From positions 92,132,001 to 92,196,000 of the forward strand of contig OZ287751.1 of assembly GCA_965649765.1 (NCBI GenBank): 64,000 nt of DNA. Direction: 5' to 3'. A program made the translations under genes and the position numbers. This DNA is from Bispira polyomma (lineage: Eukaryota). The notes under the pieces are model-generated. The model saw only the letters and a list, made by a program, of their open reading frames with translations. It ran no database searches and was not told the DNA's origin. Shown one piece after another: positions 1,313 to 47,779 of this stretch; position 1 is the stretch's first letter, and every line of letters starts with the position of its first letter.

Positions 1313-1460
1313 CCTATAGACTTCATTAGACCATTCACCAATGATGGCGAGAGTAATATGAAAATCCATTTCAACCATGGTACAACAACCCTGGGGTTCA
1401 AGTTCCAGCACGGAGTGATCATAGCTGTAGACTCCAGAGCAACTGCTGGCCAGTGGATTG
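1313..1460 (+). CDS. PSMB5: Proteasome subunit beta5 (PSMB5/8-type), internal coding exon: propeptide end and mature N-terminus with catalytic Thr1
   Basis: ttttcAG at 1311-1312, GT at 1461. 148 nt reading [23 protein letters not shown]|[26 protein letters not shown], the classic HGTTTL...DSRAT beta5 motif. Ends in phase 1. The start-codon exon is not in the window. Confidence 0.97.
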
Positions 1461-2219: not shown

Positions 2220-2331
2220 CCTGGAATGATATCAATAAAGTTATACAGATGGGTCCCTATATGCTGGGTACTATGGCTGGGGGGGCAGCGGATTGTCAGT
2301 ATTGGCATACCTTTATCAAAAAAGAAGCCAG
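2220..2331 (+). CDS. PSMB5: Beta5 alternative exon A: divergent copy of the active-site/S1-pocket exon, putative mutually exclusive exon
   Basis: ccttttAG at 2218-2219, GT at 2332. 112 nt, phase 1 to phase 2, open: (A)[36 protein letters not shown](R). Same length and phases as 4563-4674; 19/38 aa identical. Expression is not shown by the sequence. Confidence 0.85.
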
Positions 2332-2529
2332 GTACCAATCTAGCATTGTGGCGGCAGTTTTGATTTCATAGAGCGAAACACATATATAGCATGAGTTATT
2401 TGATTCAAATTTATTTTCAGAGTATGTTGCGGTTACTTTTGTTTGGTACTGTGTTTAACCGTAATGCATTTATTGTTTTAATGGAGGACAGTAACAAACA
2501 GTGCATGCCATAAATTTTCAGTTCATTAA

Positions 2530-3180
2530 TTGTATCCACCGGAGGAGTAACTCCGGTGGATACTATGGATTAGTCATCGTTACGCCGCCGCCGCCGCCGC
2601 ATCAGTGTATGTAAAGATTTTACCGTTACCGCTCTCCTGGGAAAACTTGTACACCTAGGCTCCTAAAATTTACAGGAAATGTTGTTTATCGCAAAACCTT
2701 GCCAAACTTAAAAGTGCCTATATCTTGCTTATTATTGGTCCGACAGGTTTGGAGTACCAAATAAATCTACAGAAAATCATGGGCTGGGAATCTTTTCATG
2801 CACTCAGATTTGACCTTGAGCCTCTCGTTCAAGGTCAAATGCAGATGGCCAAACTTAAATGGTCAAGGTCAGTCTTGGTCAAACTTAAAAGTGCCTATAT
2901 CTCGCTTATTATTAGTCGTACAGGTTTGGGATGTGAAACCAACCTATAGGAAATCATTTGCTGCTAAGCTTTTGCTGTGGTCAGATTTGACATTAGATCC
3001 CCTGTGCAAGGTCAAATGGGTAGGCCAAACTTTAAAGTGCCTATTTCCCACATGTTTGCAATGTGAAACCCACTTCTGCGATTTAAGGCTTTAGCATAAA
3101 TGCCCTATAGAAAATCATAGGCTCCTAGCTTGGGTGCTAGCTAGGTTGCTTGCTACCTAAAGTGCTTGCTACCTGGGATG
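2530..3180 (+). mobile_element. HINE/Helentron-derived (DINE-1/pearl-like) non-autonomous element
   Basis: Subterminal palindrome GTATCCACCGGAG..CTCCGGTGGATAC, a (GCC)n microsatellite, then degenerate tandem units (ggtcaaacttaaaagtgcctatatct...). Right end approximate. Confidence 0.6.
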
Positions 3181-3409
3181 CTTTGTTGTTTGGTCTAGTT
3201 AATTTTCCTTTGCGGTATATTATATTTTCAAGGTGAGTTGCAGTTATGTGTCCCCAATTGTTTGTTCATCATACACCTGTGTATACAATATAAAAATGTA
3301 AAAAAAAAGTGCAGTACAATTATTTAGATTTATTTAAATTCAGTAGCAGGTTAATATAGTTACAAATAATATCTGAAATAAAACCGAATAATTTAACTAT
3401 ATTTTAGAT

Positions 3410-3727
3410 TAAGGCTGCGAGTCGGGGTGTGTGAAGTGCATCGATTATCGCCCACTCGGACTTGTTGCATCATTCAATGCATCAAAAACTCCATTTTAAC
3501 CAAATAAAGTGCTGATACATACCTAGTCTCTACTGTTTTTTATGTTTTCCCACAATATACCTTCAAATTTATGTGTAAAACGACAGTGTGCTTTTGGGTG
3601 TATACTAAAATTCAGCCAATAGGGAGTACTATATAAATGATCGAGTCGCAAAGCCTGGCTCGATGTATCCTTTTTCTTGTCTCACTCGATTAATGCATCG
3701 ATGCTAGGGCTAATCGTCGCAGCCTTA
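3410..3727. mobile_element. hAT-type MITE
   Basis: TIR TAAGGCTGCGA...TCGCAGCCTTA with 8-bp TSD TTTTAGAT (3402-3409, 3728-3735). Confidence 0.88.
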
Positions 3728-3943
3728 TTTTAGATGTTGGTGACTGTTTACTGACCCAGTGTAAAGTTATAAGATATTTAACAATTTACTAATTTATATA
3801 ATTATCAGTTAATATACTTACAGGTAAAATATGAATGAATGTTGTGGTAGTAGCAGTGTTTTCATTTCAAATTTTAGTTTGAAGTGAGATAAAGGCAGTT
3901 TAGGTGCAGATTTTGTTCCAACTACCGGTATAATGTTACAGAT

Positions 3944-4079
3944 AGAGTAAGGAATCTGAAATTTCCCTCTGTACCAAAATTAGGGCAAAATAAATGCAAA
4001 AATCTCAAATACAGCAAATATTACCCCCAATTCTACAAAAAAACACAGTTGCAGTGGCGAATTTTAGATTCCTTACTCT
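3944..4079. mobile_element. MITE with AGAGTAAGGAATC termini; longer copies at ~18990-19217 and ~30880-31107
   Basis: TIR AGAGTAAGGAATCT...AGATTCCTTACTCT with TA flanks; three related copies in the window. Confidence 0.8.
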
Positions 4080-4325
4080 AATTTTTACAGTATGTATTAT
4101 AAACCTGTCATTAATTCATGGTGTTTTAACATAATTTGTGTATTGGTTTGAAATTTTATCATTTGCCGAATCAGTGTCCACATTTGGTTTGCATAAGCTT
4201 CAATACTTCACTGGACTGTTTCATGTTCAATGACATTACGATGCATTAATGACAGGTTACATATGTTTTGGTATTGATAGAAAATTACTTTTTTTAACAA
4301 TCTGGGTATGCACAAGTTTTTGTTA

Positions 4326-4512
4326 TTCAGTTGTACCCCTCTAAGTAGAACTCTTGTTTAATGGAAGTCCCTTTTGTGTAGACAAAATTCTCCAGTGCGA
4401 TAAACATTCATTTTCCTTTAGAAATCTACCTCTGATAAAGTGGTCATCTTTCTTAAGTAAACAATGTTCTATACTTGTCCCTTGAGGTTCGACTTAAAGA
4501 GGTTCAACTGTA
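4326..4512. mobile_element. Tc1/pogo-like MITE family B (other copies ~16858, 20477, 25009, 38214, 45317, 49816, 53183)
   Basis: CAGT..ACCCCT.TAAGTAGAACTC ... GGTTCAACTG-TA termini shared with many copies. This copy ends ~50 nt before the exon B acceptor. Confidence 0.75.
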
Positions 4513-4562
4513 TTTTGTGCAGTGTTATAATTTTGTGTTGGTGTATGTATGTCATTCTTTAG

Positions 4563-4674
4563 CTTCACAGACAGTTAAAAAGGTGATAGAAATCAACCCC
4601 CACCTGCTGGGTACAATGGCAGGTGGAGCAGCGGACTGTTCTTTTTGGGAGAGGGTGCTAGCTAAACACTGCAG
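4563..4674 (+). CDS. PSMB5: Beta5 canonical exon B (mature residues 27-64)
   Basis: tctttAG at 4561-4562, GT at 4675. 112 nt: (A)[36 protein letters not shown](R), nearly identical to the constitutive beta5 sequence. Confidence 0.97.
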
Positions 4675-6203: not shown

Positions 6204-6383
<180 letters not shown>

Positions 6384-8114: not shown

Positions 8115-8254
8115 GGCACCATGATCTGTGGATGGGATAAGAAGGGTCCTGGTCTGTATTATGTGGACAGTGATGGTACACGGCTCACCAACAACATCTT
8201 CAGTGTGGGCTCGGGCTCCCCATATGCCTATGGGGTGTTAGACAGTGGATACAA
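8115..8254 (+). CDS. PSMB5: Beta5 coding exon
   Basis: Poly-T tract then acAG, GT at 8255. 140 nt: [46 protein letters not shown], including the GSG motif. Confidence 0.97.
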
Positions 8255-8958
8255 GTATGTATGCTGCTTGTACTATCATTGTGCATAGTGATGCTGTATA
8301 GCTGATCTCATGTTTCATGGGAGAGTACCCCCATGTTGAGCATTACACACCAGATATGATATGTGTACTATGCAGATGTAATAGCAGTATGCATAGTAGA
8401 ACAGCAGTACGGTGAACGCTCCTGGAACACAGCAAATTTAGTCCCTATAAACAGGGTTGGGGCCGATGTAGTAAAAGTGATAGAAAAGTAATAGATTTGC
8501 TAAAATTTCCAAGTAATAGTAATAGATTTCAAAATTTAATATGTAATAGTAGTACTAGATTGCAAAGTAATAGATTTGATCTATTACTTTTCTATTACTT
8601 TCTATTACTTTCATTGTTTCATCATCAAACATATTCTTTTAGGCACTCCCATTGTTACACTGTGTGACAAATTAAATGTTATAAGATTTCACTCACAACA
8701 CAGATTTTAAAGCTATATATTTAAATGAATACTTTTCAACAACCTCATTGACAATGGACATTTGATATATTTTGATTGCCCTTTTTAAAATTATTTTATG
8801 TTAAAAACCCATGTACATATATTCAACTTTTTTGCATTTAGAAGAATTTTTATATTTTGTATTTTAAAAATTGAGTTTGAGATTATTGTAGAATATACAC
8901 CCCATGCATCTCTTGTTCATATTTTGTCCTGTCATACTTCCTATTCGTATATCACTAG

Positions 8959-9053
8959 GTGGGACTTAGAAGTGGATGACGCCTATCAATTGGGGCGAAA
9001 GGCCATTTACCACGCCACGTACAGAGATGCTTTCAGTGGTGGCACCATAAGCT
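8959..9053 (+). CDS. PSMB5: Beta5 coding exon
   Basis: ctAG 8957-8958, GTAAGT at 9054. 95 nt: [31 protein letters not shown], with the RDxxSGG motif. Confidence 0.96.
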
Positions 9054-9577: not shown

Positions 9578-9666
9578 TGTACCACATGAAAGAAACCGGT
9601 TGGGTGAAGGTTTCCATGGATAATGTACTAGATCTCCATTACAAGTATGCTGAAGAGAAGAAATAG
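9578..9666 (+). CDS. PSMB5: Beta5 terminal coding exon
   Basis: Poly-T then cAG 9576-9577. (L)YHMKETGWVKVSMDNVLDLHYKYAEEKK then TAG at 9664-9666. Confidence 0.96.
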
Positions 9667-9725
9667 AACAACTGCAGTGTTAAATACTGGATTGAAAGAA
9701 ACACATTAGTGCTTATACAAGACTC

Positions 9726-9877
9726 ATTAAAAAGTGTATAGTTTATATATGGAAGAGAATTGGGAAGTTATGCACATTTCATTTGGAAATACAAGTGTAA
9801 TACAATTTGCAGACAATTATTTCCTTTAAGTTTGTAAAGTTCCAGATAATGTGCATATTTCTTTCTCATAAAATAAA
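9726..9877 (+). promoter_or_regulatory. Candidate polyadenylation signals of the beta5 gene
   Basis: ATTAAA at 9726-9731 and AATAAA at 9872-9877 downstream of the stop. Motif only, in an AT-rich context. Confidence 0.4.
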
Positions 9878-12800: not shown

Positions 12801-14573
12801 TACTTGAGTTAAACTGAGCAGTTTGTGGCTTCTTGTTTCCATTCTTGTAGGCCCCTACTATATTTATTGTGGTAATAGAATAAAATAATGAGAATTGAAC
12901 AATGGAATAAATTTTAAGCATAGAACAATCAATAATCCAAAAATGGCAAAACTGGGAACGGCCTCAAAGGCAAACATATATGGCTGCATAATTTGTTTTA
13001 AAGAAATAAGCAGGGTTTTTCCCCCCCAAAAAAACAGTTGTTAAACAAAATGGAAGTATACTGTAAGACTATATCATATTGTCTATAGAAGAATAAGAAA
13101 AATTTCAGTGATTTTTCAACAATAAAGGTGGCAAATGAAATCCAATTTTATGTTCAACCTTTCTTTTAAATGAAAAAAAAAAATGCATCGATTACAACTT
13201 AAAAAAATATCTGATCAACTTTTAAACTGTATTAGTTAATTATTTATTTACTAATGACGATTTTACAGAGAGTTCGTTATATTTGTTTCTATGATGATCC
13301 CAGTTCTAACATTACACGCTTAGACAAGGCACATGAAAATCTGCCAGTTTCACATTTTATACCGCTTGCAATTCTCAATCATGTCTTTCCTGCTCAAGGC
13401 ACCTATTTACATTTTTATATTACAAGTAAAAAAAGAGAGACCTGTGGGGTGTGAATTATTCTTACCACAGAGGAGGTATCACTTCATTGTGTGTGTTAGG
13501 CCCGAGTTAGGGAGAAGCATAAAACTGTGTATTGTGGGCTGAGGTCGGGGGGTGGGGGGGGGGGGGGGGGGAGTAGAGAGAAAAATTGCCCACATCTCAT
13601 GCAGTGAGGTTCAATAGGAAAAATCTATCAATAGGAGTTATTCTTCACAGTTTGTATCAATGGGTAACAAGCCTTCATACTGTGCAGTTTTGTGTGTGTT
13701 ATTATTGACTTCGCAGGGACAGAGAGAGGAAAAAAATATCACACCCCAAATTAAACACTTAACACCTGTATGTGCTGCATATATTAATGTGGTCTGACTT
13801 TGTGTTAAGGACAGCCTTCTCCAGAGAAGAGCTCTAGGGTTTTTATAGTTGGTGTTGCTTTTCTTCTAGAAGTGGTGAGAGTGGGTGTACAGCATCTATT
13901 GTTCAAGGACGAAAAGATGCCCATTAAGAGAGAAAACCCTTGCTGGAGTATACAGGTAGCAAAATGGACAATGGTCACTGGATAGGTGTAATAAGGTTTT
14001 TCGCCCTCATTATCAGCTGTGCTCATTGATTGAAAAGCTTGCTAATGAGGAATGGGCTTCAATAGGACTTGCTTGTCAAAGCAAGGGGGTTTTTAAGACC
14101 CTGGCAGTTCATAAATGGATAAAAGGTGACACCAACATTTGATAGCAACCGGTCTTGTGTCTGTTATATTAGCCTCCCCACTGGGGACTTATAGGGAGGA
14201 GTGGATAGATAAGGGTTGAGTTTACAAGAAAGTGAGACACAGTCTGTTTGTTAGTCTTTGGTTTTCAATAACTTATTGGATGGATCAACCAGGTATAGGC
14301 GACTGGGAAACTGTCACCTATTGTTTCTGATTGTAATATGTATGTATAACTCGAGAAACGTGAAGATGTTAATTAATCAAAACAGTAGCACATACGCATG
14401 ACAATGATGTGGTTTGTACATAACAGTCTAGAAAACATATTTAAAATATGAGAGCTAGAAACAGCAAAAAAATCAGTGAGGAAGTGTTGTAATATTTTCT
14501 TTAGCAAACAGATCCAGGTGTAACAATAAGTCTGTAAACAGTTATATATTGAGCTCAAATCGTAATACATACA

Positions 14574-15699
14574 ATGGATAAAGGTACAGTAAAAGAGTAT
14601 AGTAAGAAACGTGAAAAAGGCATCGCCAAAACAAATGGGTCACATCCGCAGAGAGATCAAGGTACTACTAAATATCAGCCAGAGGAAGATCTTGAGAAAA
14701 GAACTAGAAAAGTTTGCATTGAAGTTCATGCTTGTGAGGATGGTAGGAATCCTCGAAAGGATCAAGGTACACGGAAAGTTCATGCTGCAAAGTATGACCA
14801 AGATGAAGGGAATAACCACGCAGCTATGGACAATGTACATGGCACAGATAACAAGACTCCAAGAGAATATGATACTGAAAGTCATGAGAAGCACTCTCAA
14901 AAAGAGGTGGTTGCTTCCATGCCACCAGCATCATGTATTGACAGAGACAGTAGAACAAGAAGAAACTCCAGGTTACTAGAAATGTCATCCGCTACAGGTT
15001 CTTCCTCTTCTACGACTTCTTCTGCCAGTACGGAGGGATATTCCGGAGCCAGGCCTAGACTACCGTCCTGCCTTAGGGTGAGGAAGGAAGTGGCCTGTTC
15101 TGATTCCGAACAGATCCAGAAGCTGACTCATGCGAGAAGGTCAGGAGTGGTGTTAATGATGAAGACACAGAGTCACTCCATCGATGTGGCTCTGCTAGGA
15201 TCTGACAGGAGGTCATCTAGTGGAGACAAGAGAAGGAGTAGAGACCACTCCAGGGAGTTTAGGCAGGATCATGGGAACGATACCAGCCACCAGACCAGGA
15301 AACAGATCAGTAAAGAAATTCAGGATAGAACTCAATGTGAGGCAAATGACCACAGAATACAATCTAGTGGTAATGGTCAGAAACCGCAGACTCTTGAGCA
15401 ATCGAATCAAAACAGAGAAACAAGAAGAGTGAAGTTCAGCAGCTCGCAGCCAGCCTTGGCATCTGGTATGTCCCTGGATATGTCTGCCAACGAGGGTCTG
15501 ATGAGGCCTAGGTCTCAGAGCCTTGCAGAAGGTTTTGATGACAATGCCCCTCGACTGGTGTTTGTAGGAGATCAGTATGTAGGAAAGACTGCATTGATTA
15601 CCAGGTTTACCCAGGGTTTATTTAACAGGGGGCAGCAGTCACATCAAATGGCATCCAAAGTGATTAAGTATTCAAAAAGTGTCTTTCATAAGCGATTAG
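14574..15699 (+). CDS. Atypical Rab-like GTPase, large first coding exon: long low-complexity N-terminus plus P-loop
   Basis: Long open frame ending in RLVFVGDQYVGKTALITRF (G1 box), strong donor AG|GTAAGT at 15700, phase 1. The true start may be a downstream Met such as MSSATGSSS. Confidence 0.85.
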
Positions 15700-16329
15700 G
15701 TAAGTACATATATTCATAGTTTGTTTAATCTTTTAAATAATTCTCACTACCTACAGTAGAACCTCTGTTATCTGAACATGTTAAAAGAGCAAGGTTTTGT
15801 TTGTATGGATAATAAAAGATTTATAAAATAGATGAGGAATTTCTTGTATAAAACAACAGGAAAATACAAATTTGTGAGAAGTGGAATTATGTTCATTGAA
15901 TCGATTATTGAGATATTCCGATAACTAAGGTTGTGCTGTCGTACCAGTTTGTGGTTACCTTTAATAAAATAGTGAACAGTTGAATCATACCTTAAAACTA
16001 TACAGTATTTTTTCAAACAGTAATTGCCAATAACCTACTCAAGTAACAGTTAAAACGATAATAGGTATATTCACCTAATTTGTTTTAGCTGAATTGTTTC
16101 CTTTGTTTATCATTCTCTGTTTACTTGTGCACATCAAGTGGAACAGGTGGGGATTCTGGAGAATTCTGAAAAATAGATTGCATCAATGAATAATGGCGAA
16201 ATTATCCAGGTCTCGTGTAACAACTTATAACCTTAATAAAAAAACATTGATTTCAGAGCAGTACATTTTAGTGATTTTCAGCAGTCGGGGTTCTTACTGC
16301 GTAGCATTACCTGTATCAACAGGTAGTTG

Positions 16330-25299: not shown

Positions 25300-26015
25300 G
25301 TGTAGGTGTCAGGATGGTTGATTTTGACAGAATGTACCATCTTTTGTAGTTTTATAGGCAGGATGTTCAGAAATATGATGTTCTCCTAAATGTTTATATA
25401 GACAAACAGGTTAGGATGTTTGATTCTGAAATAATGTGCACTCTTTGTTTTGTAATAGGCAGCACCTGATTCAGAATGTTTAATTTAGAAACTAGAAGGG
25501 GACTTAGCAACAAAATAAATCACAGAGAAGAAAATTCTGAAGTTGCATTTGTCCTTTGACTGGAATAAGTTTTTAAGATTTGAAAGATTCTTGCATGGCC
25601 TTAATTCTCCATTCCTCCACCACATTTCATGTACAAATTAAAATTGGTTTAGTAATTTTTGTGTAAGGCTGGTGCGCAAGAAAGTAACCAAGAGACATGG
25701 TAAAAGATACCATTCTTGGGCAAAGTAGTTATATATCCATACCCCATATGTTTTTAGAGGCAAACAGGTTAGGATGTTTCATTGTAAAATAATGTACCCT
25801 GCTTTGTGCTTTGCAGGCAGGCAAGTTCAGATGCTAGATTATGAAACAATGGATACTCCCTCTGTTGTATGGGGAAGACCCTTGTCAGGATATTTAATAT
25901 TGTGAAATAATGCATACTCCCACATCTGTTTTAACAGGCAGGAAAGGTTACTATGGATTTGCTATGAAATAATATATACTCTCCTTTAATGTGCTTTACA
26001 GGCAGACAAGTCAGG
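25300..26015 (+). repeat. Degenerate ~60-bp tandem array whose last unit contains the real splice acceptor of the Rab-like gene
   Basis: Recurring unit ...tgaaataatgta.actc..tt.tg..tt.cAG|GCAG...caggatgtt, with AG|GC at 25357, 25458, 25816, 25937 and 26001. Confidence 0.75.
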
Positions 26016-26486
26016 GTACAGTTCTGGGATATAGATGGCGGGGAAACCAAGACAGCCATCAGAAGCTCTCAGAAAGCTCATGCAGTAGTGGTATTGTACG
26101 ACCTCACAAACAGGAGCTCATTTGATAGAGCCAAGTTGTTCTTGGAGAGCATAAACCCACGTGTGACCTCCATGCTGGTGGGCAATAAGGTGGACATCCG
26201 CGACCTTCGGAGGGTCTCCTACGAAGAAGGCAGGATCCTGGCTAAGATTCATAGGGTGCAATACGTAGAGACTTCAGTGAAGTATAATCACAACATTGAA
26301 GAGACTCTTCAGCTACTGCTAGCATGTATACCTAGGGAGTATTTGGTCATTGGAAAGACGCCCTATGTAAAGCAGAGGTCAAGGTCAGACTCCACTTATC
26401 CCACGCCTACTGACATGGCACACTTTTGTGATAATTGTCAGAACAAACTTTTCCACCATCATCCAAAGGATGAAATAGGCATCTAA
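26002..26486 (+). CDS. Atypical Rab-like GTPase, second/terminal coding exon (G3-G5 boxes)
   Basis: ctttacAG 26000-26001. Phase 1 joins in frame: (G)RQVRVQFWDIDGGE...VVVLYDLTNRSSF...LVGNKVD...YVETSVK...DEIGI-stop. Confidence 0.9.
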
Positions 26487-42429: not shown

Positions 42430-44495
42430 CTGGAAATACAAGAATTTAGTAAAACTTTGAATATCCAAACTTCTGTGATCCTAATTTTCAATTTCATGAA
42501 CTCATATATCCAATCCATTTGATGAACTCATATCCCAAATGCATGTTTTTAAAATTGTTTTATGCAACAATCCCTCTTCTATTGTATAAACCTTATGTTA
42601 TCTAAAAAAAACCTCACTTTTCCAACATGTTTAGATAATAGAGGTTCTTCTGTACATGTTCTGAAAAAAATCAATGGTCGTATTTTCCAAAAATTTCAAG
42701 CGCAACACTAATAAGGTTTCCCTATCATATGTGCGACAAAAGGAGGAGATACAAGACACCTGATTACTGGATATTTGAATTTAGAGCTCAAAATTTAGAG
42801 ATAACACATGACAAAACATGCTGTATGGTCATTTTTACCACGATTGGAGGCGTAGTAACATGAAAGTGAACCCTATTCTAAAATGGCAAATTAATATTTT
42901 ACCTGATTCCAGCTGTTTTTACTGCAAAATTACGTTATTGAAGGAACTATATCCACTGGACATCAAGTACAGTACAGACAAAAATTAGTCTTGGCTGTTC
43001 CATCAAATTTACATAGTTAACTTGTGGAGTCAAGACAATGTCAATAGAATCATTTTATTCGAGAAATTTATTTTGTAAATAAATGAACAATAACATATGA
43101 AAACTAATAAATAGTAACCAACATAATATTGCCAAAGTGAACAATAACCGGAAGCATGTCAATATAATTATGTGTAGGGTGACTAAAGGAACAGCCATGT
43201 ATATATGGTCATTTTTACCGTAGCATTGAGCCAATCAAAATCACAGACACTGTGGTGTCATGTTAGAATCTGTTATTAAAATGAATGGTTACAAGTATAG
43301 GTGATTTCTATATACAGGACTTCCACAGATTCTCAGCGCATTAGGAGATTCTTATCAATTTTGGGCTATATAAATGTCTCTATCATTATATGGTCTTCAA
43401 AACAGCCTTGAGTTTCATTAGATAATATGGGCCCTGGGCTAGTGTATTCTTATTCTGAAATTTCTCTCTCAAACAATTTGATTGGCTGAAAATTTTGTTT
43501 TAAAGAATCTGACTGTCTGAGACAAAGAAAATTCTAAGAACTGTATTCTAAGAATGTTTGAGACCTGGGCTTAGGTATTCACAAAGATTGGTACTCTTAA
43601 ATAATACAGAACCCCTCTTATCTAAATATGCTGGGGGGAGCTAGAATCTGTTCTGATTACAGAAGGTCAATAAAATTACATATGTTTTAGAGGTATTTTT
43701 GTTTTTAAAACCACAGGACAAACTTAACGTTAGAGAACATCAATGATTTTATCAAATTAGACTATTCAGATAAAACAAGTTTAGATCACAAATATGCTCT
43801 ACTGGTGTATTTATTTGAAAATGGAAATGATATTTTGTAGTTTAATATAGGTTTAGTTAATTATGGCCAACTTGAGAAATAAATTTTGGCAAGTACTGAA
43901 AGTGAAAAATCAAACTAAGACATCATCCGTCCAGGGAAATCCATTTCTAACATGTCACGGCTGTGTACGAGCTTCTGATTTGCCTAAAACTTAGGTAAAA
44001 TTCAGTATATACACACATTAGCCATTTTTGTCCGTAGTATTCTTCAGTGCAGTAAATACAGTATAATTCAGGTAATGATTTTAATTTTGTCATGTTAGAA
44101 TAGGAATAACCCATTCCAAACCAGGTATTCACCTTTATGTTACTATGTCTCTAGTTGTGGTAAAATTCTGTATATGTACCTGGTTTGTAAAATTGTCATG
44201 TTTTATTCCTTAAACAAATTGACAGTGTTTGAAATTTGACTTTATATTCTCCTTTATCTTTTTGTAGTTACAATATACATTTTAGACAGGTAATATTATG
44301 TGTAATAAGCTACTACATATAGTTTCTTTAATCTGTTACCCAGACACAATCTGAAAGAAATCTGTTATCGGTTAGCCAGACACAATTTTAAATAAAAAAC
44401 CTTTTATTGGCTGTGCCAGATTCTCTGTTATACATTCTGAGAACGGTTATATAATGTGGGATAGTTAACACAGAAATACGCCATTGATCATTTAC

Positions 44496-44602
44496 CTCTT
44501 TATCATACACAGATTTGATCCTTGTTATCCTCACAAACTTGCCGTGGTTTGCAGTGACCTTGAAATATCGCTTGCCCTTGTAAATACCGTCTGTGTCGCC
44601 AA
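44496..44602 (-). CDS. Coiled-coil/CAP-Gly protein exon (second half of the CAP-Gly domain)
   Basis: AG..GT bounded, 107 nt: (L)GDTDGIYKGKRYFKVTANHGKFVRITRIKSVYDKE, matching the CAP-Gly GxxDG...G.RYF...G.FV pattern. Confidence 0.9.
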
Positions 44603-46055
44603 CTACAAAAAATAGAATGCAGAAGAGTCCTACATGTCAATAAGTACTAATAATTTGCTTTTAGTGTGATTTAAATTGAGGACTTGAGCATCAAGAACTG
44701 TGCAAAACATGCAAATTGTCAACTTTTTATAAACAAGCAAGTTTCAGTCAAATGTTATTTCTAAAATTGTAAATTGATTAACCCCTTTAGACCCCTGAGT
44801 TGTTGGTAAGCAGTCGATGGCATTTGTTGCTTCCAGAACCTATATGTCTGTTGGCAAGCAGTTGACACCTCCAAAATGTTAATTTCTTTTATTTAGTTTC
44901 TCGCAATTAGAAATTGTTGGTCCACCAGCCTCTTTTGTTTGAACTCATACATGAGGCCATTATTGAATGCGGGAAAATAATATGTGGTGTGTGTTTTAGT
45001 GATTCTACCCATCTGTAACCTGTGCCCCCAAAATTTCCTTCAGTTCCCAGTGATAGTTTTCTCTTGGGGTCAAAAGTGTTAAATACATTTAGTAAGAAGT
45101 GATAAGAGACCCTCATTTCATTTGCCTATATGTATATAGGATTCTGCGGAGATTTCTGAGCATTTATACTACAAAGTCCATTGAAAGATGTCAGTTTATT
45201 TTGTCTTGACAAAAACAACAAGCCAGACAATGATGTTGGGACTATTTTTCTTGACTATGACTCTGGGTGTGTTCCTTGGAGACTGTTTACAGAGTATTAG
45301 GCATTGTAGAAGCCAATACAGTCAAACCCCTTAAGGTAGAACTCTATTAAGTAATTTTCCCTGTTATGTGAAGAAAAATTTTAAGTCCCATAAAGGCTTT
45401 TCCCCTTCAAATCTACCCTGTTACGTGGAAATCCTGCTTAAGTAGAGGTATTATTCCTGGTCCCCTGAGGTTCAACTTTAAGGGGTTCAACTGTATATTT
45501 CATTACATATGAAGTAACCACAAGTGAATACCGGAAAAGTGTCTCATTACTGACTATTAATGTGTCTACATTAATTAATTTGTGGTTTCCCATGGTCTAG
45601 AGGTTATAGGGAGTTGGTCTGGTGATCAGAAGGTCCCCGATTCAACTCCCAGTGGGGGAAGTTGGTCAGGTGATTAGAAAGTTTTCGGTTTGACTCCTGC
45701 TACTGCCGCTATGTTTTTTGGTAATCCTTAGGCAAGATTTGAACACACCATTGCCTACTAATGATGACACAGGCTATATTGTAGGTCACATGATTAGTTG
45801 ATTGATTCGGCTGTTGCTCTTTAGAAGATGCTTTGCATCAATAAAGCATGTCAAAAATACATAATACTTATGTAAACTTATAAAGTAACTTGCTTCTACT
45901 GGGATTTGATCCCTGGATGTTGTGGATCTTAGGATTAATGATCGAACACACTAACAGTTAAGCTAAAGGGGAAACCCCAGAAGCCAGAGTGTTTAATGCA
46001 CTGACATTGCAGTACAATACATCATAGTATTACAAAAATCTGTGCAGCAACTCAC

Positions 46056-46163
46056 GTGGCTCGTCTAAGCGTATCCCAGTGTATATACGATAGCAGTCAT
46101 GTTCTTTGTCCAGATTACCAATGAATTTAATCACCCCTGAGTGGAAGTCTAGCTTTCGTTTTT
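46056..46163 (-). CDS. Coiled-coil/CAP-Gly protein exon (first half of the CAP-Gly domain)
   Basis: AG..GTGAG bounded, 108 nt: KRKLDFHSGVIKFIGNLDKEHDCYRIYTGIRLDEP, matching G.V.F.G...G..LDEP. Confidence 0.9.
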
Positions 46164-47779
46164 CTATAAAAAGAGATAAATAACACATCACTGACAGAAT
46201 CTTGGTTAAAACTTTGTTTTCTTAGTGCAAATATGTAAATTCTGTGTGTGAAATAAAAAAGACAATTTAATTAAAATGAAAAAAAGATGACTCTTTTATA
46301 TATTTATTGCTATATAGGTAATTCTCTGGAACCTGAATTTTCTTAAATTATGATTTCTATTGATGAACACTTCTCTTTACATAAATTCCTTATTGCGATT
46401 ATCTTCTAGTTACAGTAGGAAGTTAGTATGAAAAATTACAGTAAAAAGGTTGACATTTTGTACAACTGTCAGAAAGATCTCAAGCAACACTTTTCACAAT
46501 GTTTATTGTGAAACTTGTCAATTTTATTATCATTTATTAGATAATCAATTGATAAAAGACACACTTATATGTTTGAGCTCTTTCAAGCTTCTTTCCAACT
46601 TAAGAACTGATTTTTATTGTCAGGTATAGCTATTTAAAAACTGACAGGCATATTTTAAACCTGATTTCATCAGTTATTTCTTATTTAATTGTCGATTCAC
46701 ATAGTACCTGGCAGCTGATTTCAATAACTGATTTCTCCAGAGGTTTTCTAATTGAAAGCCTGATTTACATACTTTACATGTGATTTCTGTACCTATTACT
46801 AGGTCAAACCATACGTCCTCTACCTTAAAGTTTCAGCCACAACATGTATGTGGGAAAGTTGGCAGTAGAGTTGCTGAAGGTTATGGTTTGCAGTTAAAAT
46901 GATTTACAAACTACCCTGTTCTGCTTCTGTCTGCCAATAAACATCCTATTGTGATATTATTATATTCACTTGTTGAAATTTTACCCCAAATCACTGCTAA
47001 AATTATAGATGAAAAAAAAATCATAAATTTTAAATATTTCCCTGAAATTAATTTTCATCTAAGGCTATGTTAAGTTAAAAGCTTAATTCAAGTTTAAATT
47101 AATGTTATCTGTCTCAATCCATTAGCTAAACTTTCCACTAGTCTTATACATTAAATCTCAAACCAATTTCACTACATGTTGTCTTCAGTGGTCTTGTGGT
47201 TTAGTGAGTTAGTCTGGTAATCAGAAGGACTTTGGTTTGACTCCTGGTATAGGGATTTAATCCGGTGATCAGAAGGTCCCTAGTTCGGCATCCGGTTGGG
47301 GGATTTGGTCTATTGATTGGAAAGTCCTTGGTTTGACTCCTATCCTACTAATGCCGCTAGAGTCATTGGTGGCCTAACATCCTTGGACAAGATGAGAATA
47401 TGTCATTGCCCACTGATGACAACCAAGGCCATGTTATATGACTACGCCTTTCAGAGAATGAGCCCATTACAAGATGATATATCAATTAAGCCCACTGTAT
47501 ATGTGCTTCAATATCAAACTCAGAGGGCCGCAGTGGCCTAGTGGTTATAAGTGTCTGCATTAAAATCACTGGCCTCTCATCTCTTGAGATCCAATCCCAC
47601 AGATTCCTTCTTTATGTGAGAAAGCTTGTCAAGTACTTGCCATAGGTCGGTGGTTTACAGTGGCTTCAGCACTGGTTTCCTAAACCACTTAAATTCTGTC
47701 ACGATATGACCAATACTGTTAAAAGTGACGTAAAACCCAAATATATTCAAAAACAAACATGACTACAGATCACACCTAC

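What the first reader, a model, noticed from the sequence alone, without database searches (positions are those of the whole stretch)
2220..4674. Proteasome beta5 gene with two tandem, mutually exclusive active-site exons: an alternative proteasome made by splicing
Seen: two 112-nt exons (2220-2331, 4563-4674) lie between the same flanking exons. Both are bounded by tttAG|C and AG|GTAC, run phase 1 to phase 2 and are stop-free. They encode mature residues 27-64: [38 protein letters not shown] versus [38 protein letters not shown] (19/38 identical). In the shared [11 protein letters not shown] core, 5 of 11 codons differ at silent positions and none change the amino acid. That is the signature of an old duplicate under purifying selection, not a dead copy. 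Known: this segment holds catalytic Lys33, Gly47 and S1-pocket residues 31, 35, 45, 49 and 53. Jawed vertebrates diversify beta5 by gene duplication (PSMB8 immuno-, PSMB11 thymoproteasome); invertebrates are generally held to lack these subunits. Inference: this animal swaps the beta5 specificity module by mutually exclusive splicing, giving two 20S proteasome types from one gene. I know of no description of this but cannot search.
Basis: partly seen in the sequence, partly recalled or inferred. Interest (0 to 1): 0.96.

Follow-up and report, generated by a model that had tools for sequence, protein, structure and literature searches.

The report
Two-way active-site exon in worm proteasome
A fan worm's single gene for a main cutting subunit of the proteasome has two interchangeable versions of the exon that shapes its substrate pocket; the unusual version is conserved in other species and in one lineage has become its own gene, so these animals probably make a second proteasome type by splicing, though no RNA has yet shown it.

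Summary
Observation confirmed. The only beta5 (PSMB5) gene of this genome, a sabellid fan worm (mitogenome matches Bispira sp. 2), has two 112-nt versions of exon 3: divergent A (2220-2331) and canonical B (4563-4674). Either alone gives an open frame; both or neither give an early stop. A is not a dead copy. A second species has the same exon 2-A-B-exon 4 order with intact splice sites (A vs A dN/dS about 0.12). Two further species carry an A-type exon in a separate beta5 paralogue; in the one contig long enough to tell, it is the sole exon 3, at the syntenic locus, beside a B-only gene. The four A copies form one clade (97/99) with fixed Trp28, Asp30, Ile31, Gly38, and keep Lys33, Met45, Gly47. 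Capitella, two molluscs and a bryozoan have one exon. The immunoproteasome likeness is not conserved. The S1 pocket stays hydrophobic; the large change is at S3 and helix 1. Splicing of A is unshown: only DNA runs were found. No paper describing this was found. The scan had noted it only on this window.

The parts
1313..1460 (+). PSMB5 exon 2 (148 nt, phase 0 to 1): end of propeptide, Thr1, Asp17. Exon 1 (141 nt, 47 codons) lies about 6.1 kb upstream of the window, L027:3921-4061
2220..2331 (+). Exon 3A (112 nt, phase 1 to 2): divergent alternative for mature residues 27-64; Trp28, Asp30, Ile31, Gly38, Met41, Gln53, Glu62, Ala63; keeps Lys33, Met45, Gly47, Ala49
   Evidence: orthologous copies in L030, L029, L031, L047
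2332..4562 (+). Intron between A and B (2231 nt), largely high-copy repeats; no conserved element or pairing shared with the L030 intron
4563..4674 (+). Exon 3B (112 nt, phase 1 to 2): canonical beta5 residues 27-64, 30-34 of 36 identical to other animals' exon 3
6260..6359 (+). PSMB5 exon 4 (100 nt, phase 2 to 0), shared by both forms
8115..8254 (+). PSMB5 exon 5 (140 nt), holds Ser129
8959..9053 (+). PSMB5 exon 6 (95 nt), holds Asp166 and Ser169
9578..9877 (+). PSMB5 last exon: stop at 9664-9666, AATAAA at 9872-9877
44493..44612 (-). CAP-Gly exon of a neighbouring gene; synteny marker that ties the L029 A-only paralogue to this locus

Best explanation
Exon 3 of PSMB5 was duplicated in tandem in an ancestor of these worms. 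Copy B stayed canonical; copy A specialised. The pre-mRNA is spliced to hold A or B. Because each is 112 nt, both or neither shift the frame to an early stop (probably removed by nonsense-mediated decay), so only two 274-residue precursors are made. They share the propeptide, Thr1, Asp17 and the C-terminal catalytic residues and differ in residues 28-63. The A form should stay an active, chymotrypsin-like subunit (Lys33, Met45, Gly47, Ala49 kept) with an S3 pocket narrowed by Trp28, a slightly changed S1 (Ile31, Gln53) and a changed helix-1 surface. It is probably a minor, tissue- or stage-restricted form; the male germ line is my first guess (about 40%), by analogy with Drosophila. Shown: anatomy, frame, conservation, selection, the split into two genes in another lineage. 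Inferred: splicing, decay of the out-of-frame forms, incorporation into 20S, pocket effects, tissue.
For: Frame: A only and B only both reach the stop at 9664; A+B stops at 4576, neither at 6271. Same exon order, 112-nt length and AG/GT sites in L030. A vs A: pN 0.20, pS 0.69, dN/dS about 0.12, Fisher p 2e-5; synonymous sites saturated against L029 and L031; most differences at third positions. Four A copies are one clade, 97/99 (36 columns only), with six positions where no A residue occurs in 18 other beta5, beta5i or beta5t exons. In L029 an A-type exon is the only exon 3 of an intact-looking paralogue that keeps Thr1, Asp17, Lys33, Ser129 and Asp166, head to head with a B-only gene. Its CAP-Gly neighbour's best match in this genome lies 35 kb from PSMB5 in the same orientation. 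Residues 27/28 line S3 and 32/45/53 shape S1 (PMC11819894).
Against: No RNA run was offered and no junction was seen. No protein with an A-type exon joined to its flanking exons was found; those searches are weak for this (clustering, length limits, crowded candidates). Only one other species shows A and B in one gene. The taxa of L029, L030 and L031 are unknown. No usable structure of the A form; pocket effects rest on vertebrate and yeast structures.
Confidence: 0.82

Rival explanations
1. Exon A is a silent, decaying duplicate in this species, although it was functional in ancestors or relatives.
For: No expression data. This copy is on a fairly long branch (0.28) and has some private residues (His56, Thr57, Phe58).
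Against: Frame, length and both splice sites are intact, and its acceptor is as pyrimidine-rich as those of the constitutive exons. All family-fixed and catalytic residues are kept while synonymous sites are near saturation and flanking introns share nothing with L030.
Confidence: 0.07
2. Exon A is a poison exon: included together with B it sends the mRNA to decay and tunes beta5 levels.
For: A+B gives a stop at 4576, far upstream of later junctions.
Against: Conservation is at the amino-acid level with near-saturated silent sites, which a poison exon does not need; in L029 the A type is the sole exon 3 of a full gene.
Confidence: 0.05
3. The A form is an invertebrate immunoproteasome subunit, related to or convergent on beta5i and induced by infection.
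For: This copy has Asn32, Gln53, Tyr54 and Glu62 as in beta5i, and its best solved-structure match is a beta5i chimera. Asn32 and Gln53 widen S1 in beta5i (PMC11819894, PMC8379283).
Against: Asn32 is in only one of four A copies. Gln53 is also in canonical exons of L030, Capitella, fungi and plants. The beta5i residues Ser46 and Cys/Ser48 are missing. A and beta5i are separate clades. beta1 and beta2 show no clean duplicated exon, and no extra catalytic gene was seen. This rival is a sub-case of the best explanation as to tissue and trigger.
Confidence: 0.12
4. Assembly artefact joining two haplotypes or two genes.
For: The A-B intron is rich in repeats and no contig spans it.
Against: Exon 2 and exon A lie on one contig in three runs; the genome has no other beta5 exons; L030, an independent 2.6-kb contig of another species, has the same order.
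Confidence: 0.02

Closest known systems
Constitutive beta5 (PSMB5 / Pre2)
   Same: The gene is the genome's only beta5; exon B and the shared exons are canonical, with all catalytic residues.
   Different: It has a second exon 3. Capitella, Mytilus edulis, Gigantopelta and Watersipora loci have one.
Vertebrate beta5i (PSMB8) and beta5t (PSMB11)
   Same: A second beta5 with changes around S1 and S3 that could change products.
   Different: Those are separate genes with their own propeptides, tied to MHC class I. Here only residues 28-63 are swapped, the propeptide is shared, the signature (Trp28, Asp30, Ile31, Gly38) differs, and the tree separates A from beta5i. S1 stays hydrophobic, unlike beta5t.
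PSMB8 Ala31/Phe31 allelic dimorphism of fishes and frogs (PMC12650242)
   Same: Two kept versions of the same pocket region at one locus.
   Different: Those are alleles; here both versions sit in one gene copy.
Drosophila testis-specific beta5 paralogues (Belote and Zhong 2009, via PMC12650242)
   Same: An invertebrate, faster-evolving second beta5; A changes about four times faster than B between this species and L030 (dN 0.24 vs 0.06). The L029/L031 paralogue is of this gene-duplicate kind.
   Different: Whole-gene duplicates, not alternative exons; testis expression is not tested here.
Mutually exclusive exons from tandem duplication (arthropod Mhc, PMC2257972; PKM1/2, FGFR IIIb/c and Dscam from my own knowledge)
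   Same: Neighbouring homologous exons of equal length and phase; exclusivity can be enforced by frame.
   Different: I found no such case described for a catalytic proteasome subunit, and no docking-selector pairing is conserved here.

Membership tests
PSMB5 (beta5) | Thr1 after a propeptide, Asp17, Lys33, Ser129, Asp166, Ser169 | tested here: met
   Read exon by exon; Lys33 in both A and B
PSMB5 (beta5) | Hydrophobic S1 with Met45 and Ala49 | tested here: met
   Both exons and all four A copies
Mutually exclusive exon pair | Tandem homologous exons of equal length and phase with own splice sites | tested here: met
Mutually exclusive exon pair | One exon gives an open frame; both or neither do not | tested here: met
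Mutually exclusive exon pair | Conserved under purifying selection in other species | tested here: met
   L030, dN/dS about 0.12; one other species with both exons
Mutually exclusive exon pair | Transcripts with each exon alone | tested here: inconclusive
   Only DNA runs were offered
Mutually exclusive exon pair | Conserved docking/selector RNA pairing (not required in all cases) | tested here: not met
   No shared intron element or pairing between the window and L030
Immunoproteasome beta5i (PSMB8) | Descent from the PSMB8 lineage | tested here: not met
   Separate clades on the exon-3 tree (few columns)
Immunoproteasome beta5i (PSMB8) | Ser27, Asn32, Ser46, Cys/Ser48, Gln53 as a set | tested here: not met
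   Only Asn32 (one copy) and Gln53; Gln53 also in canonical exons
Immunoproteasome beta5i (PSMB8) | Induced by immune signals and assembled with beta1i and beta2i | not testable with these tools
   No RNA; no second beta1 or beta2 seen
Thymoproteasome beta5t (PSMB11) | Hydrophilic S1 pocket | tested here: not met
   Ile31, Met45, Ala49 in A; lowest similarity of the panel to fish beta5t
Testis-specific beta5 (Drosophila type) | Testis-restricted expression | not testable with these tools
   No RNA run

The most novel reading that the evidence does not exclude
Fan worms build a second, regulated type of 20S proteasome with altered cleavage preference by switching one exon of PSMB5, a splicing route to what vertebrates and flies do by gene duplication. 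A related lineage later split the two splice forms into two genes, so both solutions can be compared for the same module. The narrower version, that it is immune-induced, has about 0.12.
Probability: 0.6. Interest if true: 0.88.

Novelty: new variant of a known kind. Interest (0 to 1): 0.76.

Why it matters
The alternative proteasomes described in two recent reviews (PMC12650242, PMC13022661) come from duplicated genes or alleles; a text search for splicing terms found none in either. A switch of residues 28-63 alone, with the same propeptide, would be a natural experiment on how S1, S3 and helix 1 set product spectrum and assembly. It would add annelids, which lack MHC class I, to the animals with a specialised beta5, which bears on why such subunits evolve. 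The A-only and B-only gene pair in L029 is a candidate case of splice forms being divided between duplicates. Trp28 may also change sensitivity to peptide inhibitors, which is easy to assay.

Tried and rejected
RNA evidence: the run search gave three runs of one study, which behaved as DNA when laid. Two pattern scans of metagenome contigs for the A signature found nothing. To reach full-length A-type proteins I padded exon alignments with a longer database protein: with a B-type pad the profile favoured B; with an unrelated pad only the three known fragments came back from a capped candidate list; both are weak negatives. The Atlas gave only generic proteasome clusters. A single-sequence fold of Mytilus beta5 was unusable (pLDDT 36). 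No remnant of exon B in the paralogue's intron. A link of the L029 paralogue to beta5t, suggested by a motif I recalled, was rejected: beta5t scored lowest or near lowest for its exons. Searches for other duplicated exons in beta1 and beta2 found none clean, while the beta5 control was found. Paper searches for this arrangement found nothing, and the SRA accessions are in no held paper. Exons were joined only inside one script to locate stop codons, with no sequence printed or saved.

Full report
Observation. The window begins inside a proteasome beta5 gene on the + strand. Exon 1 lies about 6.1 kb upstream (L027:3921-4061); exons follow at 1313-1460, 2220-2331 (A), 4563-4674 (B), 6260-6359, 8115-8254, 8959-9053 and 9578 to the stop at 9666. 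A and B are both 112 nt, phase 1 to 2, with AG acceptors and GTAC donors. Against solved structures B is canonical beta5 residues 28-63 and A aligns to the same stretch. A genome-wide search with A finds only A and B, and a mollusc beta5 finds only this locus, so this is the animal's single beta5 gene.

Host. The genome is 1.035 Gb in 75 contigs. It has erythrocruorin linker genes and a 15,503-bp mitogenome with cox1-3 and nad3 on one strand and most other protein genes on the other, 38.7% GC, AT skew 0.17, GC skew -0.22. That strand pattern is described for Sabellinae (PMC7889199), and length and skews match Bispira sp. 2 in PMC13602327. The host is therefore a sabellid fan worm, very probably a Bispira.

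Frame. With A alone or B alone the frame runs to the same stop at 9664, giving 274 residues with exon 1. With both it stops at 4576, with neither at 6271. Both early stops lie far before later junctions, so decay is the simplest way exclusivity is enforced (inference). The exons are 2.2 kb apart, so steric exclusion does not apply, and no intron element or pairing is shared with the second species.

Other species. A search of 1.84 billion representatives with A returned two A-like fragments and a profile search a third. L030 (SRR20820736, 29% GC) has exon 2, an A-type exon, a B-type exon and exon 4 in the same order, with 112-nt exons and AG/GT sites. Between the window and L030, A has pN 0.20 and pS 0.69 (dN/dS about 0.12, Fisher p 2e-5), and B has dN 0.06 with saturated silent sites. 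So A is old, constrained as protein, and about four times faster than B. L029 (SRR23287134) holds two genes head to head: a canonical beta5 with only B after a short intron, and a divergent paralogue (about 50% identical to canonical beta5, exon by exon) whose only exon 3 is A-type and which keeps Thr1, Asp17, Lys33, Ser129 and Asp166. L031 and L047 carry the same paralogue type in another species, on contigs that end shortly after the exon. The CAP-Gly gene that faces the paralogue in L029 has its best match in this genome at window 44493-44612, 35 kb from PSMB5 and in the same orientation, and both the paralogue and the window's gene lack an intron that Capitella and the molluscs have. The simplest history is one gene with A and B, then an inverted duplication with reciprocal exon loss in the L029 lineage (inference; the taxa are not known). 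Capitella, Mytilus edulis, Gigantopelta and Watersipora have a single exon 3, so the feature looks restricted, perhaps to Sabellida.

What A changes. The four A copies form one clade (97/99 on only 36 columns). Trp28, Asp30, Ile31 and Gly38 are fixed in them, and at these and at 60 and 63 no A residue occurs in 18 other beta5, beta5i or beta5t exons. Lys33, Met45 and Gly47 are kept in all four, as is Ala49. Residues 27/28 line S3, and 32, 45 and 53 shape S1 (PMC11819894, PMC8379283). I therefore expect an active chymotrypsin-like site with a narrowed S3 and a changed helix-1 surface; from my own knowledge that helix faces the alpha ring, so assembly could be affected too. None of this was modelled: the joined protein was not folded or searched.

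Immunoproteasome likeness. This copy has Asn32, Gln53, Tyr54 and Glu62 like beta5i, as note s1-611865 also said. The test weakens it: Asn32 is in one of four A copies, Gln53 is common in canonical exons, Ser46 and Cys/Ser48 are absent, and the tree keeps A apart from beta5i. About 13 proteasome-family loci were seen, with no second beta1 or beta2 gene and no clean duplicated exon in either, so only beta5 seems to be switched.

What is missing. The run search offered no RNA run; the three runs laid behaved as DNA and confirm exon 2 and A on one contig without differences, but may be the assembly's own sample. No spliced A-type protein was found in the protein collections, but those searches could easily miss one. 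Splicing, tissue and function are thus inferred.

Novelty. Alternative beta5 subunits are known as vertebrate PSMB8 and PSMB11, as PSMB8 alleles at residue 31, and as Drosophila testis paralogues (PMC12650242). Mutually exclusive exons are a common device (PMC2257972). I found no paper that joins the two, and two recent reviews have no hit for the splicing terms searched; the library lacks most subscription papers. Verdict: a real, conserved feature and a new variant of a known kind; interest 0.76, held back only by the lack of RNA and protein evidence.

Noticed in passing
L029:1-2190 (SRR23287134); L031, L047: Head-to-head pair of a canonical beta5 and a divergent A-type beta5 paralogue in a compact genome with introns mostly of 60-90 nt; the paralogue has Asn52 in place of Cys52 and Thr169 in place of Ser169.
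   Followed up: partly
G000:C9 about 15,318,945-15,319,700 (L052): In the beta2 (PSMB7) gene, a degenerate copy of the start of one exon leads into an intronic minisatellite just upstream of the real exon.
   Followed up: no
window 14553-15716 and 25968-26483 (+): A long low-complexity frame ending in a Ras/Roc P-loop start, and a further Ras exon: possibly a Rab-like GTPase with a long N-terminal extension.
   Followed up: no
window 44493-44612 (-), further exon near 46080-46220: CAP-Gly domain gene, syntenic with L029; not identified further.
   Followed up: partly
window 8115-8959: This beta5 gene lacks the intron after mature residue 107 that Capitella, Mytilus and Gigantopelta have, and has one near residue 144 that the molluscs lack; L037/L046, another lineage, lacks intron 2.
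   Followed up: no
G000:C75 (L041, L042): Mitogenome of 15,503 bp with genes on both strands, matching the published type III pattern of Bispira sp. 2.
   Followed up: yes
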